A stretch of 64,000 nt of DNA from Podarcis pityusensis (Eukaryota), in assembly GCA_964106645.2 (NCBI GenBank), contig OZ067043.1; one strand, given 5' to 3'. Below, piece after piece: positions 2,204-36,975 of this stretch (within the stretch, counting starts at the first letter, position 1; the number at the start of each line of letters is the position of its first letter). The notes beneath the pieces were generated by a model. It saw nothing but the letters and a program-made list of their open reading frames with translations, searched no databases and was not told the origin of the DNA. A program made the position numbers and the translations under genes.

Positions 2204-4294
2204 TTAATTTGTTTTTGTGACTGTGTGGATCCCAGTTCAGCTACTGATTGATTGACTGATTGTGTGACTGTGGAAATGGATAAAAGCCTCCTATCTAAAC
2301 AATGACTATCATCAGTGCAGGTAAGAAAAAAAATTAATTTTAATTTTTATCATCTACAATACTGTTTTATTTATTTTATAGTACAGTACATTGATTATTG
2401 TTTTCATTTTATGGGTCAATGGTCTTGTTAGATAGTACAATTTATGTTAAATTGCTATTTTAGAGGTTGTTTTTAAAGGTCTGGAACGGATTAATCCATT
2501 TTGCATTACTTTATATGGGAAAGTGCACCTTGGTTTTAGAACAGACTTCTGGAACGGATTAAGTTTGAGAACAAACGTACCACTGTACTTGTTCAGCTGG
2601 AAAGTTTTTGTGCCAGTGGAACATTGTTGCAAGTGGGTGGCTGGTAACTTTGTTGCACAACAAATTTTCACTAGTGCAGCTGTTAAATTGGATTCTTCTG
2701 TTGCATGACATTAAAACCTGTCCATCCGCTAACACAAGAGCCCTTGCATTATTAGACAGAGAATATTGGATACATCCCATTTTCATTTGACTGTGTAACT
2801 CCAGTCTGTATTTGGTTGTAGCAACTATACAGTGCAGTTCCCTGTGAGGTAGAAGTATTATCTCCATTAAGTAGAGATGAGCCACTAGGGCTAACTACAG
2901 AATGCATGAAATCTCAGGGGGGTGCCTCCCCCCGCCAAGCTGTTTTGTGAATATGAGTGGGGAAATTAAGCATGGGAGTAATGGGAGGAGCTTCTTCATA
3001 TTTTTTTCTCACCTGCTGCTTCTCTGTTCTAATGTGCTCCCTAAAACTGCTTTTAATCCAAACTCTACAGCTGTATTCTGTAGGGAAAAATACATGTATT
3101 TGCGTGTAATGTTCAATTATGCCCCACGGTTACTTAAGTGCCTGAGTTGAAGTGAGTTGGCTTGGAAGTGAATTAACTAAAGGTACAGTTGTCAGCAATA
3201 GATCAAAATTTTGAATGTCAGTGGCACAGTAACCATTGCAGAGAGGAGTAGAACAAATCCAAGGGGGACTGGTCTAATCTAGCAAGTGACTGTTGGTGGA
3301 ACCAGAACACTCCCGCATAAGGAGGGACAATGATCAGGAACCCGAAGAGATAAAATTTGTCAAAACTCACTCTTGTAAATGCACTCTTCCACAATGACCA
3401 GAGGCTTTCATTGACCCATTGTGGGAGAGAGCAAGCTTTTGCACAACACCAGGCAATTAACTGAATTCAACCAGGGGAAAACATGCAGTGTAGCAACATG
3501 GATCTATGGTTAAATCCTATTGCTTTCAGAAATTCAGCTTCTTCTGGAACTTTTAATTAGTGGCGCAACCAAAAGCTTTCTGCATGGCAAAGCATAATAT
3601 AGAACCTCATGGTAAGCTTCCTGCTATGGAATTTGCTTCTTAAAAAGCAGACATGATTGAACAAACAAACCACTTTACTTGGCTCTGTAAGAAGCAGGCT
3701 GTTTTGGAATGTAAAATTAAAATGTCTATTCTAGGAGGAGCCACTTCACACACTTTAAAACCTTCCTGTTCCATTGTTTTAAAAAAGACTATGTGAAATT
3801 GTAATACATAGAAACACCCTATATTTCCAATAATAGAACCAGACAAGGACATTTAAATATAGAAATATTTCGATTGGCATTCTGGGAGAATGGAGACCCT
3901 CCGTTGTCTACACAAACAGAGGAAAAACCTGTTGTGAAATCAGGAAGTCTTTAACCTCTCACATGTCAAATCACTACTTTAATCTTAGTTTTATTAAACT
4001 GAGATTTGTTCACAATGTTTGCACCTGCTTTGGTGATATCTTCTCATTAACTCAGTTTACTTGGAAGCTGCAAAAAACATGTATCTTTCAACACAATTCT
4101 GACTCCACTATTTGGACTCATGCTTAATAGGAAAGCAATACTAAGCCCTCTCCTTACAATGTCTATTAATATGGCAGAATGCAATTATTTGCTTCTCCTC
4201 CTGTAAAATTATTTGTTCACTCATAATTATGGAATTCAAGGTATTCCAATACTAAAAATTATGTCTGCATGTGAAAACACAAATTCATTTTAAC

Positions 4295-4393
4295 CTTAGG
4301 AAGAGACCGTGCTGCCTGAAGAAGTTTTCTGCGATGCTGTGGGTCACTAATACCAATCTCCCGAAGGTCCTGATCTTCCATGACATTACTGCC
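4295..4393 (-). CDS. ANKS1A: ANKS1A SAM1 exon, second half ([33 protein letters not shown])
   Basis: Acceptor ttgtcttcctacag|GGC and donor AAG|gttaaa. 99 nt, phase 0-0. SAM helices 4-5. Confidence 0.96.
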
Positions 4394-25048: not shown

Positions 25049-25155
25049 CAGGAAGCGAACATCATCAAAGCCATTGAGAAGCAGTTTGCTCTCATACTGC
25101 TGTAAGCCGATGGACTCCAGCCACTCCCCAACACTCTGCTCCAGCATCCGTGAAC
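25049..25155 (-). CDS. ANKS1A: ANKS1A SAM1 exon, first half ([36 protein letters not shown])
   Basis: Acceptor cctctctcgtcag|GT and donor CTG|gtaagt. 107 nt, phase 1-0. SAM signature [10 protein letters not shown]. Confidence 0.97.
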
Positions 25156-25252
25156 CTGACGAGAGAGGAATCGGCAGACGCTTGAAAAAGGAAAACCCAT
25201 TAAGGCGGTAGCAGCGGCACTCTGAGGAAGACAGGTGGCATTGCCACATCAT
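25156..25252 (-). CDS. ANKS1A: Putative alternative N-terminus of an ankyrin-less ANKS1A isoform ([32 protein letters not shown]), in frame with the SAM1 exon
   Basis: ATG ATG TGG CAA TGC CAC CTG at 25252 runs without a stop into the SAM1 exon. Gap-free resemblance to the recalled ANKS1B/AIDA-1 short-isoform N-terminus. 5 CpGs retained in 97 nt. Confidence 0.75.
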
Positions 25253-27139
25253 AGTCATTACCATAAAGAAGCCAAACCAAGGCCAGAGTACAACAATTAG
25301 CTGACAGACAGTTCCTCTTCTGTACACAAACCATGAACAATAAGCTTCTGTCCTGTTCAAACTAGAGCGTTAATCGGTCTCCCGGTTATACTCAAACAAA
25401 CTCTGAATCCAAGCTGTTTAGAACCATTCCTGGGGCCAAGGCATCACATGCACTGATTTTCTGGCTCAAGTGTGCTCCTCGCCAGGCAAAAGCATCCCAA
25501 ACCTCACAAGACTCCTGGGTCAGCTCCTTGTTTCATCTGAGGGGGCTGAAAACTTTCCAAGGCAACATTCCAAGCCAAGGCTACAGGCACGAGAGACAAG
25601 AGAGGGCCAGCTCACAAATAAACACAGCCCAGCAGATGCTTGCATCCATGCAACTTCAGATGCATTACCTTGTACAACAGGCCAGTAAGGAAGACTGTTA
25701 GCACTGGAGGTGCAAAGCAGTTAGAGAGAAAATACATCTTCATGCAGCTGAGAGAGACAAACAGACACGATGGGTGTTCAGAAAAGCAGCAGCAGCCAGA
25801 TTAGTGAACAGCTGTCCAAAGGAAGACATGCAAGACAAATAAAAACAAAAACAAAAAAGACAAACTGCAGTAGAAGAATAAAGATTTATACTTTTTTTCC
25901 CCCAACAGTCCCGGAACAGGCAAACCATGGTACGGGCTTTTCTTTGTTATTTTATTATAAGGAGTGGAAGCATGAGGGACAACAAGCCTGAGCTTGGAAG
26001 TCCTGCCACTGTCATTTTATCATCTATCCAGATGCATGACATCCTGACAGCCGGTATTGACTGATCTGGGCTGGGAACCAGCGTCAACATCTAAACTGGA
26101 ACAAATAAGTATACCGGAGCATCCAGTCTGAGCAAAAAGATAAATGGTCAGCTCATTTTCCACCCAACATGCCTGCTCCTGCCAGTTCTTTGTTGACTTG
26201 TATTTGCCCGTCCTTCATTTTCTTCCACTAAAGGCAAGTACTACCTTCAAATTCCTTACTGAGATAATGAACAGCTTTCAGAACAAAGCATCTTAGCTCG
26301 TTGGTTTAAGGGGGTGAGGAAAGCCAAGCAAGATGAACACGCCCCCTCCCCTTTTCTCCGCAGCAGATAGGGTTAGATATGTCCTGGCACCTCCTTTCAG
26401 CTGGTTAGTCAGAAATAAATTCTTCCAAGAGCCCCGTAGAAGCTATATGGAACGCCTCTTCTTCCCTCCACACATCAGAGGAGAGTCTAGGAACTTGTTA
26501 CTTTCCCTGTGCAGAACTGGTGATATTTGATGAAGCAAGGAAAGTTCAGAGCCCACGTCTTTGCAGTCCTCAGAGGAATTGCTATGCAAGTCACGCAGAA
26601 TTTTCTCAGTCTTCCTAGCATGTCCGTCACTGAAGGGCATTTGCAAAATATTGATGAAGACACCGGGGTTGCAGTCTTTGAACCCTGTGGTTATCAGAAG
26701 TTCTGAACATCCTAAACTAGCCTCCACCCCTTTCTTTCCAGACTGCCTACACAATGCAGTGCTGGCTATTATCTGAACAATCGAGGGGTTAGAGATCCTG
26801 TTACGCTGGCCTTCAGAAAAGATCCTCTGTTAAGCAAGTCAGTGTTAATGAGTGCTCGGGAGCTGGCCAGCCTTCTTAATGCATACTGCAGCACAAGGGA
26901 TGCAGCACTCACAAAAGATTTCCTCCTCCCTTCTCTGACAAAGCCTGGGCAAAGGGACAGCATCTATATCCCCAAATTCCAAGCAGCAGGCTCTTGCTGG
27001 CCAGAGATTCTTTCCTTATCCAGGGCTGATTCTTTTCTACTCCATAAGCAGGCAAAAGGACTCTGGTATTTTCCCAGGCAAGCATGTGTCCCTTTCAGAG
27101 AGCTGCAGCAGACTGCTTTGTCTAAAGGCAGCAAGCTCC

Positions 27140-32300: not shown

Positions 32301-34420
32301 AAAAATAACCTATTTCCAAAATGCATTCTTTAAGAGTTGTTATTTATATTGTTATCTTTACTTGTTGTAAAAATAATTTGCTTTATAACGTTAAAAAAAA
32401 GTGGAAACTGCAACAAGATGTTGCGGTGTCCCCTCCCTCCTAATACAAGTTCTCTGTTCAGAGGTCCAGCCAGCCATTTCATCCAAACAGGGCATGCCCC
32501 TTTCTCTCTCCTCCTGCTTTTTTTCTTTGAAAAATTCCTTGGCTGCTGAATATGATCAGTCCTCACTGGACTGTTTCTGTGGTTTCTTCACCACTTTAGG
32601 CTCATTTAAGATTTTTTAAAATGCTTCTGCAAAACTGGGTGGGGCAAGGGGGTATAACAGTCTTCTCTCTGAGGACCTGTGGGGTTATCAGAACTAAGCG
32701 GTAGCTTACAGCTTGTAGCTGTATTTCAATCCACATTCTTACTTCATGCTTCCATTCCAGGTGTGGAAGCAAATGTGTGGTTTATTTTATTTTATTTTAG
32801 CACCCTTTAATGAGCTGTAAAAACTTGGAACGTTTCTGGTAGTTTTCTGAAAAGCAAGTCAGTCTGCAGCAGCACCTCTGAATGTTTTCATGTTTTTGCC
32901 ATGGGCTGTCACTGCTGTTTTGTTCTGCATCACATTTTTGAAACACTGTACTAAAATATTCCACAAGCTGCCACAAGGTTTAACCAAAGATGAACTCCTG
33001 ATAATTTAAAAATCACTTATTCTCTACTCCTTATATGAGGAAGTATTGCTGAAAAAACCTTGCTATTCTCCTTCCTCTTGCCCCAGACTACAAGACTCCT
33101 TAAAGCAATCTGATGAAAATGGTGCTTTAATTACTACAGCAAGGCTTTTTCAATGACTTGAAGATGCCACCTTCAGGACTTCATGTTGCTACAAATTACT
33201 GTTGAAGGCTGGAGAAGATGGGGGTGGGAGCAGAACTAGGATGCAGTCTTCCACCTTTGTCAGAAATTCTCAGTCAAGGTTGCCCACGAAAGAAGGCAAG
33301 GGATTGAGGAAACTGGTATAAAAGGCATCTTTTCCCAGGGCAAGTAGGGCTCTAGCTCATGTACATGCAAGAATCAAGATCCAGAAAGTGATTTTTCATG
33401 AATGAAATCAAGCCAGGAAATTATCAGATATATGGGCCCTTTATACTGATGGTTTAAGGTTGCTTGAAAAGTGCTTTGTGTCCCACCCTCTTCTCCTCCC
33501 TTTCTCCTCTTTTTTTACAGACGGTATTTTTCCCCCTGAGTATTTAAAATGTTTAAAAATGCAATATAAAAACTATACAAAAGGAAAGAAAAAAAGAGCC
33601 AAATAGACCTAAGTAGAAAAAAGGCAGCAGATAAAACTACAAGGAATCCATTGTACTGGATCTTTTTTAAGCCCTGCTCTTGCTGCATTTTGCCCTGTAG
33701 TCTCTTTTTGCCTAACCCCACCAAAGCTTGTAAACTCTCTGAACACAGAGCCCATTTCTGTTGTGCGCAGCACATAACAAAATATAGAGGTGCTTCCTTC
33801 CTCAACAAGCCTTTTAAGTGGAGATCTTTATCCTGGTCTGAATCTGTACTGGATTTAAAGCTATTTTCATATATGATTTTTTTTTTTTAGTGTGTTAAAT
33901 CATTTTGAGATACTTTATGGTTAGTAATTCATGAACAGAATCAAACAAACAAATATCTAAATAAGTGAAGGAAGGCAAAACTGGGGTCAGATAAAATGTA
34001 TGGTATGAGCAGCAGTGAAAGTGGAGTTGTAGTAAAGGGGGAGGGGTAGCCAGTCCATTAAATTAAGCATGGGGAGGGGTGATCCAATATCATGAAAGCT
34101 GGCTTTCTCTTCTCCCTCGTACAGCTCTAAACTCCACACCCTCAAATTTACTCCAGGGAGTTCCCCAACCCTGGCCATTCCGCTGGCAGATAAATGCTGA
34201 TGGATATCCCCATCTAATCAGGGACTGCAGAATAGCAAATTGCTGCCTCTTATCTGGATTTCTGGTCTTAAAGGGAAGCCTTAAGATAGCTGCATATCTC
34301 AACTATGGGGTTGAGAAATACAAGGTTCCTCAATGGTAAGTCCCAAATGGGCCCAACTTTTTGTACTGCTCTCTCACTTGTTTGAATTGACTCACACCCT
34401 TTAGCAGTTCAGTATGGTAC

Positions 34421-34487
34421 CTGAAATCCTCTGCTGTTCCTGAGAAAAGTCAATGCCTTCACCAATGGAGCTCATTATTTTTTCAAT
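34421..34487 (-). CDS. ANKS1A: ANKS1A coding exon ([22 protein letters not shown])
   Basis: Acceptor ttatgtttttcag|ATT and donor CAG|gtacca. 67 nt, phase 0-1. Near-identical to human [17 protein letters not shown]. Confidence 0.95.
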
Positions 34488-36975
34488 CTGAAAAACATAA
34501 GAAATTATTAGTGATAATTGAGCAACACCTGACTAGAGAGCTTCTTAATCCTATAATTGTATAAAGCTACACGTCCAAGAGATTTGTATTGTTGTCTGGA
34601 AATAATAAATTCATGGTAAATATAAGAGAGAGAAATCTATAGAAGCATCTTACCAAGCTGATAACTAGCAAGAAAGTGATAACATTTGTTCATACTATAG
34701 AATAATCTATTCCTCTGATCTCACCTTAAAATACAGAAACTCCCCACTACCAATAAAGAATATGCCACTCCAGCTAAGAAGAGAACCTTCAAGGCAAATA
34801 ACCCAATACCAAGTTGCTTCTACTGAAAGCCTGCAAAGACATTAGGATGAGCTGGAAACCATGAACAGATAGCAGCAGTATTTTAAAGTACATTTCAACC
34901 AGGAAGAGAGAAGCCAGTCAATCTAACTGAACTACAGGTTCATGTAGATGCTCCCAAGCATTTATATCTCAAAAAAAGGAATCCATTGTTGCAGTCAATG
35001 CCACATTCTGGATATTATTATTTTTTAAAAAACAACCTCTACATCTTTTTAAAAGTACTTTGACAAGTGGTCTTATGTACCAACATCTAAGCAGATCTTC
35101 AACCTACAGAGCTTGATGCCCAGGCACTTCTTGTGCAATCCTGGAGAAAGAAGGAGGAGGAGGAGCTTCTTTGGGTTTGTTTGTATGCTCAAAGACCTAG
35201 GAATACTGTCTAGGAATAGACATGGGTGGCAAATGGTGTTGATGGGTTTATGCCCAATTCCTGCAAGACAATGATATCTAATACTCCATTTAGTTCTGCA
35301 CTGTTCAACCCACAAACCTTGACATATCAAGTTACTGCACATCTCATTTAAGTTATCAAGTTTAAGATGCGCTTTTACAGCAGTGGAAATAGACTTCTGA
35401 GGTATTTCTTCATAAGATCTGCTATCTTATGCTACCATAATAAAATCAACTTATTATGAAAGAGAAGACTGAATCTCAAGATGACATCCCTGACAAATTA
35501 CCAAATTAATGTAGAACTGCTTCTTATGAGCAAATGCCTAAGGACATTTAACAGACACAATCATTTATTTTCCCTGTTCATCTCACTTCTCCTGCATCAA
35601 CTTTTAGATTGTAAACTTTGGGGGGAGGAAAGTACCATGCACATTAATTGCACTACAACAAGTAAACAACAACAAAAGTAGCAATAGGTTAGATTTACTC
35701 CTGTTGAGACACCACTGCTTTGTTTTAGCAATTTTTTCAAAAGCAATGAAAGGCCACTCCTCTCATTTTTTTTGGGTCCTCTATGGGCTACCTCTAAAAA
35801 ATTGACATTAAATTCACATCCCCTCAGTATGATTTTATAGAAGTAAGCTTGTAGCATAATGTCTAAATGTCAAAGACCTCCAGCAGGAAAAAGCATTTTT
35901 ATCCAATAACCATATGAGTTACAACATGTTTGATATAGCACATTGACTTTTATATGACTCTACAAATAGCACCAGAACAGACTCAAATGTTTTCAAAACC
36001 CAGCAAAGGAAAAACACAAACACCAAGAAAGCAGAAAATAACTGCACACTAAGCAACCCCAGCAGTCAGCCTGCTTCCCAGATTAGGCAAAGTTTTGCAG
36101 GTTTCTTACATTGGAGAAAGATTGAACTTCGACGACATCAGGCACCTGCTGCTGAAACTGCTGGGAAAGAGCAAAACATGCATTTCAATCCATTAAGTTA
36201 AGCACAATTTTGTCTAGGAGAATGGATTATGCAAGGTCTCTTCTTAAGACTGTTTGATTCAGAACAGCACAAGTTCAGGCCAGAATTTAATAAAGGGCCA
36301 TGTCCCCCCCCCCTTTTTTTTTTGTACCATGAGTTGCCTCCTGGTCTTAAGCACTGCAGGTAAAGTTTTAAACTATTCTACAACTTCTATGGTTGACTGT
36401 GCAATTTAACATTAAAATGAGGTAGATACTCAAAAGCAGATGTGGAAATAGGGTTCCCAATGTTTTTAGTGCATCAAACTATTTTCAGATTTCCTGTTTC
36501 TCATACTGCTAAGAAGCAGGTACTTTACAGATAGGTACTTTATGTTACTTTATGTATTTCTTGTGGGGCAACATCCTGAAAGGAGCTTTCTTAGATTGCA
36601 GTCATGGGGACCATGGGGATGCAAGAATAAAAGAAACACAAAGACAAGCATTTTTAAGTCCAATATGCACAAAACAGTCCAACCCAATAAAAAAAATTCC
36701 TGAGTACATAAGATGACCCAATAGAAACATGGATTCTGATCAGTTATTTCAGCTGAATGACGTCTTTTTATTCCTGACAAATGCCAATATGTATAAGAGT
36801 GCAGAGAACTTTTTTGAAGTCTAAAAGTATGCTTCTCCCAAAAGCATATACTGCAGCTTAGATAGCAAGACACATGAGCGGTGTCCTACTCATGAAATGG
36901 GACTATCTTGCTCTCTCTTCCTGATTGCAGCTCAGTGCTTTATGAAAAGCCTACCTTGTGAGATATTGTGTAGAG

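What the first reader, a model, noticed from the sequence alone, without database searches (positions are those of the whole stretch)
25049..25264. Hidden AIDA-1-like N-terminus: a probable ankyrin-less short isoform of ANKS1A (Odin)
Seen: the 97 nt of nominal intron directly upstream of the SAM1 exon acceptor are open and in frame from ATG 25252. They read [45 protein letters not shown], with further in-frame ATGs at 25258 and 25264, and retain 5 CpGs in a CpG-depleted background. Known (from memory, needs verifying): short synapse-to-nucleus AIDA-1 isoforms of the paralog ANKS1B begin [33 protein letters not shown] immediately before SAM1. That aligns without gaps (first 8 residues identical, about 16/33 overall). 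Inference: the internal start predates the ANKS1A/ANKS1B duplication and is still under selection in ANKS1A, giving a SAM-SAM-PTB Odin isoform that I do not know to be characterised. The same bases would serve as the polypyrimidine tract and acceptor for the long form and as codons for the short form. Cys5, Cys12 and Cys14 are candidate palmitoylation sites.
Basis: partly seen in the sequence, partly recalled or inferred. Interest (0 to 1): 0.85.

Follow-up and report, generated by a model that had tools for sequence, protein, structure and literature searches.

The report
Conserved ankyrin-less ANKS1A start before SAM1
The stretch just upstream of the first SAM-domain exon of the lizard ANKS1A (Odin) gene really is a conserved protein-coding start for a short isoform without ankyrin repeats, like the AIDA-1 short forms of ANKS1B, but gene-prediction pipelines already list this isoform in dozens of vertebrates.

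Summary
On the minus strand the frame is open from TAA 25372-25370 to the donor at 25049. It has ATGs at 25264, 25258 and 25252 and runs without a break into the ANKS1A SAM1 exon (25155-25049).

- **Match to AIDA-1:** the 33-residue peptide matches mammalian AIDA-1 short forms at 16-17 of 33 positions, gap-free, with the first 8 identical.
- **Conservation:** the same peptide, starting at MMWQC, precedes SAM1 in 89 ANKS1A-type and 21 ANKS1B-type proteins from teleosts to mammals.
- **Coding signature:** across nine orthologous loci there is no stop or frameshift. Substitutions fall on third codon positions (4/3/21 in independent pairs, p about 2e-5; dN/dS about 0.03 lizard versus bird or mammal).
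- **Dual use:** the last 8 codons, which double as polypyrimidine tract and acceptor, are almost base-invariant in amniotes.

It is not hidden. NCBI and UniRef already hold predicted SAM-SAM-PTB ANKS1A isoforms with this start (Anolis X12, Pituophis X4, birds, mammals, about 35 teleosts). I found no paper that characterises it.

Extras: a sauropsid-only alternative acceptor (exon start 25221, +66 nt in frame), and a conserved upstream ATG block with UGCAUG motifs.

Palmitoylation is untested.

The parts
25156..25252 (-). Coding part specific to the short isoform. It holds the start codon at 25252 (MMWQC...), 32 codons, and the first base of the Gly codon that is completed in the SAM1 exon. For the long isoform this stretch is intron.
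   Evidence: sequence; the peptide is conserved in 89 ANKS1A-type proteins; third-position bias 4/3/21, dN/dS about 0.03.
25253..25264 (-). Optional four-codon extension (MVMT) with in-frame ATGs at 25264 and 25258. It is present in amniotes, varies among them (MVTT, IMMI, IVMT), and is absent in amphibian-like and fish loci.
   Evidence: Across taxa, conservation begins exactly at MMWQ.
25156..25180 (-). Polypyrimidine tract and canonical 3' splice site (AG 25157-25156) used by the long isoform. The same bases encode the ...LPIPLSS residues of the short form.
   Evidence: the long-form junction ..RIS|GSR maps to 25155; codons 26-33 are base-invariant in 5 of 6 amniote loci.
25049..25155 (-). 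First SAM1 exon of ANKS1A, shared by all isoforms. The donor gtaagt lies at 25048-25043.
   Evidence: 95-100% identity to PDB 5zry and 2lmr; tblastn exon map.
25156..25221 (-). Alternative in-frame exon extension (+66 nt, 22 residues) through an upstream acceptor (AG 25223-25222, preceded by ctgtcttcctc). Two bird long-form models use it.
   Evidence: P0149 (Chloebia) and P0159 (Heliangelus isoform X12) join ..RIS directly to ECRCY..; this AG is present only in the sauropsid loci WIN, L001, L003 and L006.
25265..25372 (-). Leader just upstream of the start. The frame is open but not conserved as protein, and is closed by TAA at 25372-25370. Nucleotide conservation reaches about 25286 with mammals and about 25346 with a bird.
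34416..34490 (-). The long-isoform exon that is normally spliced to 25155 (..[22 protein letters not shown]). It defines a roughly 9.26-kb intron that holds the internal start.
   Evidence: tblastn with P0061 and P0149.
4277..4393 (-). Next downstream exon (rest of SAM1). Further downstream exons lie at 1264-1425, 1008-1124 and 266-436. The PTB exons lie beyond the window start.
   Evidence: tblastn with the Anolis short isoform P0127.
25889..25930 (-). Conserved block about 640-680 nt upstream of the start. It has an ATG at 25928 in GCCATGG context, followed by about 10 conserved codons (MVCLFRDCWG). All five substitutions seen in those codons are synonymous. It may be a uORF of a long leader or another first exon.

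Best explanation
The stretch 25156-25252, with an optional extension to 25264, is the N-terminal coding sequence of an alternative first exon of ANKS1A.

Transcripts that begin inside the roughly 9.3-kb intron upstream of the SAM1 exon carry no upstream donor. The acceptor at 25156/25155 is therefore not used, and the 'intron' bases are read as codons from the ATG at 25252. The reading continues in frame through SAM1 (25155-25049) and is then spliced to the normal downstream exons. The product has SAM1, SAM2 and PTB but no ankyrin repeats. It is the ANKS1A counterpart of the AIDA-1D/C-type short isoforms of ANKS1B.

What is shown:
- the frame;
- homology of the peptide in both paralogues;
- purifying selection at the protein level from teleosts to mammals;
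- overlapping splice-signal constraint on the last codons.

What is inferred:
- use of an internal promoter in this lizard;
- the exact transcription start;
- the role of the 33-residue peptide.

The peptide is Cys/His-rich and predicted to be disordered. I take it as most likely a short targeting or partner-binding module, with lipidation of the invariant Cys5 as one possibility.
For: - **Frame:** the sequence and frame are confirmed, and the exon is ANKS1A SAM1.
- **Breadth:** a scan of all representatives found about 60 proteins that align over query residues 1/5/6-72, many of them starting exactly at MMWQ or MWQ. Of these and later hits, 89 are ANKS1A-type and 21 ANKS1B-type, and 52 ANKS1A proteins begin exactly at this Met.
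- **Existing models:** NCBI and UniRef hold predicted ANKS1A isoforms with this start. Their Pfam hits are SAM_1, SAM_2 and PID only. They include Anolis X12, Pituophis X4, Naja, Sylvia X7, Athene X7, Macrotis X7, Puma X2, Sorex X5 and about 35 teleosts.
- **Coding test on nine loci:** indels are whole codons only and there are no stops. Differences by codon position are 1/0/8 (lizard vs bird), 1/0/7 (vs rodent-like), 5/2/17 (vs amphibian-like) and 9/2/19 (vs fish). The sum over independent pairs is 4/3/21 (chi-square p = 1.7e-5). dN/dS is 0.014/0.49 and 0.014/0.42. The pattern matches the constitutive SAM1 part.
- **Where conservation starts:** conservation begins at MMWQ, while upstream residues differ between clades and carry a stop in the rodent-like locus.
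- **Same layout in ANKS1B:** unspliced ORF calls run from MMWQ through the SAM1 exon, and the long-form junction sits before the same Gly.
- **Known parallel:** AIDA-1D/C lack ankyrin repeats and are major brain isoforms (PMC6684583).
Against:
- The runs that hold the stretch are not on record as RNA. They may be DNA or target-capture libraries.
- The predicted isoforms in other species are automatic models. I could not inspect the RNA support behind them.
- If the leader is long, it carries 11 or more upstream ATGs, which would weaken scanning initiation at 25252.
- There is no CpG island upstream in the lizard (CpG o/e 0.18 over 500 nt).
- The peptide has no confident predicted structure (pLDDT below 50 for residues 1-36), so its function is open.
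Confidence: 0.85

Rival explanations
1. The conservation reflects an alternative 3' splice site that lengthens the SAM1 exon of the long isoform by 66 nt (exon start 25221), not a separate short isoform.
For: Two bird long-form models (P0149, and P0159 isoform X12) join the upstream exon directly to ECRCY..., in frame. The window has a good pyrimidine tract and AG at 25223-25222.
Against: That AG exists only in the sauropsid loci. The rodent-like, bat, amphibian-like and fish loci lack it yet keep the peptide. The 10 codons upstream of it ([10 protein letters not shown]), including ATG ATG TGG, are equally conserved with third-position changes only (WIN vs all: 4/0/24). So this form is an addition in sauropsids, not the explanation.
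Confidence: 0.07
2. The stretch is non-coding. It is conserved only as branch point, polypyrimidine tract and intronic splicing-regulator sequence for the SAM1 exon, and the open frame plus the database models are artefacts of intron-retaining reads.
For: - Codons 26-33 are nearly invariant at the base level in amniotes.
- dS of the peptide region is about half that of the SAM1 part.
- Conserved UGCAUG motifs lie upstream.
- Many database hits are mere ORF calls on unspliced contigs.
Against: - Substitutions concentrate on third positions (p = 1.7e-5).
- Indels are whole codons.
- No stop occurs in nine loci spanning roughly 430 My (teleost-tetrapod split, from general knowledge).
- The start codon pair is invariant.
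- Protein identity exceeds DNA identity.
Confidence: 0.05
3. The coding capacity is ancestral and kept in other vertebrates, but it is silent (no internal promoter activity) in this lizard.
For: No RNA evidence was obtained here. The lizard's upstream region is CpG-poor.
Against: The lizard sequence is intact and identical in peptide to Anolis, for which NCBI predicts isoform X12. There are only synonymous changes against the other lizard locus L001 (0/0/1).
Confidence: 0.1

Closest known systems
AIDA-1D / AIDA-1C, the ankyrin-less short isoforms of ANKS1B (PMC6684583)
   Same: - The N-terminus begins MMWQCHLS, directly contiguous with the SAM1 exon.
- The junction sits before the same Gly codon.
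- SAM-SAM-PTB is retained and the ankyrin repeats are lost.
- Identity over the first 33 residues is 16-17 of 33, without gaps.
   Different: - It is the other paralogue: the SAM1 exon here is ANKS1A.
- The ANKS1A peptide keeps Cys12 and Cys14, which mammalian ANKS1B has replaced by Tyr. Fish ANKS1B keeps them.
- AIDA-1 short forms are shown as proteins in brain. The ANKS1A form is only predicted.
Predicted ANKS1A short isoforms in NCBI/UniRef (for example Anolis carolinensis isoform X12, Pituophis catenifer X4, Sylvia atricapilla X7, Athene noctua X7, Puma concolor X2, teleost anks1ab models)
   Same: It is the same gene, with the same start peptide (98-100% identical in squamates) and the same domain content, SAM_1/SAM_2/PID.
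   Different: These are automatic models. Some start at non-conserved upstream ATGs: Anolis has +68 residues and Sylvia +25. In the present window an in-frame TAA at 25372-25370 closes that extension.
Human ExMC-specific short ANKS1A isoform driven by an ape-specific LTR2B in intron 7 (PMC12082684)
   Same: It is an ankyrin-less ANKS1A protein that keeps both SAM domains and the PTB domain. It is made from an internal promoter and was shown by western blot and by CRISPR deletion.
   Different: It has a different, recent promoter: an LTR that splices into the next exon and gives a 593-residue protein. It is ape-specific. It does not use the ancient MMWQ start next to SAM1.

Membership tests
ANKS1A (Odin) gene | SAM1 exon sequence and exon order of ANKS1A rather than ANKS1B | tested here: met
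   95-100% identity to ANKS1A SAM1 structures 5zry and 2lmr, against about 60% to ANKS1B 2kiv. ANKS1A models map colinearly to 60644...266 on the minus strand.
AIDA-1-type ankyrin-less ANKS1 isoform | Start codon and MMWQC peptide directly 5' of, and in frame with, the SAM1 exon | tested here: met
AIDA-1-type ankyrin-less ANKS1 isoform | The peptide is protein-coding under purifying selection, not merely an open frame | tested here: met
   codon-position counts 4/3/21 (p = 1.7e-5), dN/dS about 0.03, no stop or frameshift in nine loci.
AIDA-1-type ankyrin-less ANKS1 isoform | Product keeps SAM1, SAM2 and PTB and lacks ankyrin repeats | tested here: inconclusive
This is met for orthologous models (Pfam PF00536, PF07647 and PF00640 only). 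In this window only the SAM exons are present and the PTB exons lie outside it.
AIDA-1-type ankyrin-less ANKS1 isoform | Transcription from an internal promoter, with mRNA unspliced across the SAM1 acceptor and spliced downstream | not testable with these tools
no holder run is on record as RNA.
AIDA-1-type ankyrin-less ANKS1 isoform | Protein detected at the expected size | not testable with these tools
   This needs a western blot or mass spectrometry.
   Cys5 is invariant in 18 ANKS1A and ANKS1B short forms, and Cys12 is at least 90% conserved. Cys14 is kept in ANKS1A and fish ANKS1B. His6 and Trp3 are also invariant.
   The paper search for ANKS1B plus palmitoylation returned nothing relevant by title or abstract; the papers were not opened.

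The most novel reading that the evidence does not exclude
The 33-residue Cys/His-rich peptide (invariant W3, C5, H6, Y15, S21, K24, R25, P27) is an ancient functional module, probably dating from before the ANKS1A/ANKS1B duplication. It is exclusive to ankyrin-less ANKS1 isoforms and acts, for example, as a lipid anchor or a partner/metal-binding motif that sets their localisation.

On this reading, ANKS1A has a physiologically important Odin-short form that has been overlooked in all Odin knockout and antibody work. In sauropsids, 22 of the same residues are also inserted into the long form through an extra acceptor. Expression would be controlled by a long leader carrying a conserved uORF-like ATG block (25928) and UGCAUG motifs.
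Probability: 0.3. Interest if true: 0.5.

Novelty: already known. Interest (0 to 1): 0.3.

Why it matters
Work on Odin/ANKS1A (EGFR and Eph receptor trafficking, ER export, LRP1 transport, ependymal development) treats it as a single ankyrin-SAM-SAM-PTB protein. A deeply conserved ankyrin-less form would change that in two ways. Some knockouts, gene traps and antibodies would hit only one of two products. The short form could also compete with the long one for SAM and PTB partners.

The sequence evidence here shows that the short-form start is under strong selection from fish to mammals, in both paralogues. That makes a worthwhile, directly testable lead for people working on ANKS1 proteins. 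As a genome-scan finding it is not new, because public annotation pipelines already predict the isoform in many species.

Tried and rejected
1. **Read evidence.** The look-up of sequencing runs listed 20 holder runs, none on record as RNA. Fourteen small runs of about 100 M letters, guessed to be RNA, hold 35-62% of the words. Later work used only sequence beside them or offline scripts on data already held.

2. **Search not run.** For the same reason, and because pLDDT was low, I ran no fold search.

3. **P0053.** Looking it up as a possible transcript showed a genome annotation model, not RNA.

4. **Papers.** Searches found no paper on an ANKS1A isoform starting next to SAM1. One broad search was uninformative, and none linked ANKS1B to palmitoylation.

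5. **Structure.** The AlphaFold model of residues 1-150 of the snake short form gives confident SAM helices but pLDDT below 50 for residues 1-36. There is no structural lead for the peptide.

6. **Conserved ATG block at 25928.** I tested whether it could be a first exon spliced to SAM1. Its apparent donor leaves phase 2, which fits neither acceptor (25155 or 25221, both phase 1). The bird locus has no GT there, and none of the 180 fetched proteins contains the motif. So I rejected it as a simple spliced coding exon and left it as a possible uORF.

7. **Possibly human ORF calls.** Four ORF calls (P0007, P0008, P0010, P0014) carry the His variant seen in the human SAM1 structure. I took them as possibly primate or human and fetched no contig for them.

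8. **Joined model.** I built and searched no joined (spliced) protein model of this window. Exons were handled by reference only.
Full report
**Observation**

The gene lies on the minus strand. Reading window:25049-25264 in that direction gives 72 codons without a stop. ATGs lie at 25264, 25258 and 25252, and a fourth follows at 25249.

The canonical acceptor AG is at 25157-25156, so the shared exon begins at 25155. The frame stays open upstream as far as TAA 25372-25370.

The 97 nt from 25156 to 25252 hold 5 CpGs. Their CpG o/e is 0.77, against 0.20 for the window and 0.09-0.27 in the neighbouring stretches. The window has no N.

The exon part is 95-100% identical to solved ANKS1A SAM1 structures (5zry, 2lmr) and clearly less similar to ANKS1B (2kiv), so the gene is ANKS1A.

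**Gene layout**

tblastn with long and short ANKS1A proteins from the searches places exons at these positions on the minus strand:
- 60644-60534
- 54424-53858
- 34490-34416
- 25155-25049
- 4393-4277
- 1425-1264
- 1124-1008
- 436-266

The intron before the SAM1 exon is therefore about 9.26 kb, and the finding sits at its 3' end. The PTB exons lie outside the window.

**Is the AIDA-1 resemblance real?**

A scan of 1.84 billion representative proteins with the 72 residues returned about 60 proteins that align over the whole query or from residue 5/6 onward. Many begin exactly at MMWQ or MWQ.

The window peptide matches them at 17/33 and 16/33 positions, gap-free, with the first 8 identical.

Many hits are simple ORF calls on unspliced contigs: they run on past the donor as ..FLVS or ..FMVS. 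They say nothing about expression, but they are samples of the orthologous loci. They show that in ANKS1B too the MMWQ start is contiguous with the SAM1 exon, and that the long-form junction sits before the same Gly codon. The same architecture in both paralogues argues, by parsimony, for an origin before their duplication.

Invertebrate-looking hits show no such peptide upstream of SAM1, so the module looks vertebrate-specific. I could not sample sharks or lampreys.

**Is it already annotated?**

Yes. I searched the named protein collection with the N-terminal region of the spliced bird model P0001. It returned 56 proteins, all named ANKS1A or unnamed, nearly all with only SAM_1, SAM_2 and PID Pfam hits. 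They include:
- Anolis carolinensis isoform X12
- Pituophis catenifer X4
- a Naja naja model
- Sylvia X7, Athene X7, Pelecanus X2
- Macrotis X7, Puma X2, Sorex X5, Ochotona X6, Pipistrellus X8, Capricornis X2/X4
- about 35 teleost anks1a/anks1ab models

Counting all fetched proteins, 89 ANKS1A-type and 21 ANKS1B-type sequences carry the motif, and 52 ANKS1A proteins begin exactly at it. So the N-terminus is not hidden from public annotation.

In the papers I could search, no one characterises it.
- ANKS1B short isoforms AIDA-1D/C are well documented (PMC6684583).
- A different ankyrin-less human ANKS1A isoform, driven by an ape-specific LTR2B in intron 7, has been shown experimentally (PMC12082684).

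**Is it coding?**

I fetched the DNA of eight further loci through the ORF calls:
- another lizard (L001);
- a locus with bird-like upstream sequence (L003);
- a bird-like locus (L006);
- a rodent-like locus (L007);
- a bat-like locus (L008);
- an amphibian-like locus (L004);
- two fish loci (L009, L010).

The organism labels are my inference from similarity to named proteins.

All keep the frame from MMWQ to the donor, with no stop. The only length changes are whole codons: minus one codon in the bat-like locus and plus one in fish.

Differences from the window by codon position in the 32-33 peptide codons:

| Compared with | Position 1 / 2 / 3 |
|---|---|
| L001 | 0/0/1 |
| L003 | 1/0/3 |
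| Bird-like (L006) | 1/0/8 |
| Rodent-like (L007) | 1/0/7 |
| Amphibian-like (L004) | 5/2/17 |
| Fish (L009, L010) | 9/2/19 and 9/2/18 |

The constitutive SAM1 part shows the same pattern. Over four phylogenetically independent pairs the sum is 4/3/21 (chi-square p = 1.7e-5). dN/dS is 0.014/0.49 against the bird-like locus and 0.014/0.42 against the rodent-like locus.

The 10 codons that only the short form can use ([10 protein letters not shown]) show 4/0/24 against all loci. This is the signature of a translated sequence under purifying selection, not of a conserved intron.

**Dual use of the bases**

Codons 26-33 (..LPIPLSSG) are the pyrimidine tract and acceptor of the long form. They are base-invariant in five of six amniote loci. 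dS of the peptide region is about half that of the SAM1 part.

**Where translation starts**

Conservation begins exactly at MMWQ. The four residues before it vary (MVMT, MVTT, IMMI, IVMT, and unrelated residues in amphibian-like and fish loci). Further upstream the reading differs by clade and contains a stop in the rodent-like locus.

The ATG at 25252 has A at -3. The long N-terminal extensions in some predicted models (Anolis +68 residues, Sylvia +25) are not conserved, and in this window they are closed by the TAA at 25372-25370.

**A third form**

Two bird long-form models (P0149 Chloebia, P0159 Heliangelus X12) join the 34416-type exon directly to ECRCY.... In the window this corresponds to an acceptor AG at 25223-25222 behind a good pyrimidine run. 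The exon would start at 25221 and be 66 nt (22 residues) longer, in frame.

That AG exists only in the sauropsid loci (WIN, L001, L003, L006), not in the mammal-like, amphibian-like or fish loci. It therefore cannot explain the vertebrate-wide conservation. It may be a sauropsid addition.

**Upstream region**

With the bird-like locus it covers 25346-25232 and 25939-25716.

The 42-nt block has an ATG (25928) in GCCATGG context followed by about 10 conserved codons. All five substitutions seen among four loci are synonymous in that frame. The bird-like locus keeps the ATG and most of the motif but has no GT at the apparent donor.

Read through, the ORF ends at the same conserved GCTGCATGA in four of five loci, although its body is not conserved. 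The apparent donor phase fits neither SAM1 acceptor, and none of the 180 fetched proteins contains the motif.

I record this block as a possible conserved uORF of a long leader, unresolved.

Four TGCATG motifs lie on the gene strand within 25447-25832, three of them conserved in amniotes. About 0.2 would be expected from the window-wide density.

If the leader reaches 25800 it holds 11 or more upstream ATGs. The lizard upstream region is not a CpG island (o/e 0.18). The bird-like and bat-like regions are richer (0.64-0.68).

**The peptide**

In an alignment of 18 short forms of both paralogues, W3, C5, H6, S8, Y15, S21, K24, R25 and P27 are invariant, and C12 is at least 90% conserved. C14 is kept in ANKS1A and fish ANKS1B and is Tyr in mammalian ANKS1B.

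AlphaFold with that alignment folds the SAM helices well but gives pLDDT below 50 for residues 1-36. The peptide is probably disordered on its own, or it folds only with a partner, lipid or metal. Palmitoylation remains a suggestion. I found no literature on it.

**Expression in this species**

I could not test this. No holder run is on record as RNA.

Four ORF calls that carry the His variant of the human SAM1 structure may be primate or human. I fetched no contig for them.

**Verdict**

The feature is an ancient, selected, AIDA-1-like ankyrin-less start of ANKS1A.

It is already predicted in public annotation for many vertebrates, including a lizard and snakes. In the literature I could search it is experimentally uncharacterised.

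An identically titled first-reader note of the same length exists in this genome 200,774 letters before the window (s1-711332). I could not tell whether it is the same note in other coordinates or a second copy.

Noticed in passing
window 25889-25930 (minus strand; ATG at 25928): A 42-nt block is 88-93% identical between lizards and mammal-like loci. It has GCCATGG followed by about 10 conserved codons (MVCLFRDCWG), and all five observed substitutions are synonymous. An AAG|GTA follows in lizards and mammals but not in the bird-like locus. Read through, the ORF ends at the same conserved GCTGCATGA in 4 of 5 loci. It may be a conserved uORF of the short-isoform leader or an unannotated first exon. 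The donor phase fits neither SAM1 acceptor.
   Followed up: partly
window 25447-25452, 25647-25652, 25741-25746, 25827-25832 (minus strand): Four TGCATG (Rbfox-type) motifs lie on the gene strand within about 390 nt upstream of the SAM1 exon, where about 0.2 would be expected. Three are conserved across amniote loci.
   Followed up: partly
window 25221-25223 (minus strand): A sauropsid-specific alternative acceptor would add 22 in-frame residues of the short-form peptide to the long ANKS1A isoform. It appears in two bird gene models (P0149, P0159). It is absent from the mammal-like, amphibian-like and fish loci.
   Followed up: partly
window 25334 (minus strand): An ATG here begins MVC.., similar to the block at 25928. 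It is in frame +1 relative to the MMWQ start in the lizard. Through small indels, the aligned ATG is in frame in birds, where the Sylvia X7 model starts (MLCAH..).
   Followed up: no
same genome, 200,774 letters before the window start (note s1-711332): An identically titled first-reader note of the same length (216 letters) exists in this genome. It could be the same locus in other coordinates or a duplicated copy of this exon.
   Followed up: no
P0158 (Takifugu UniRef model), residues 1-37: A fish model joins further upstream coding exons to an acceptor placed just before MMWQ. In teleosts the peptide may therefore also be reached by splicing, not only as a first exon.
   Followed up: no
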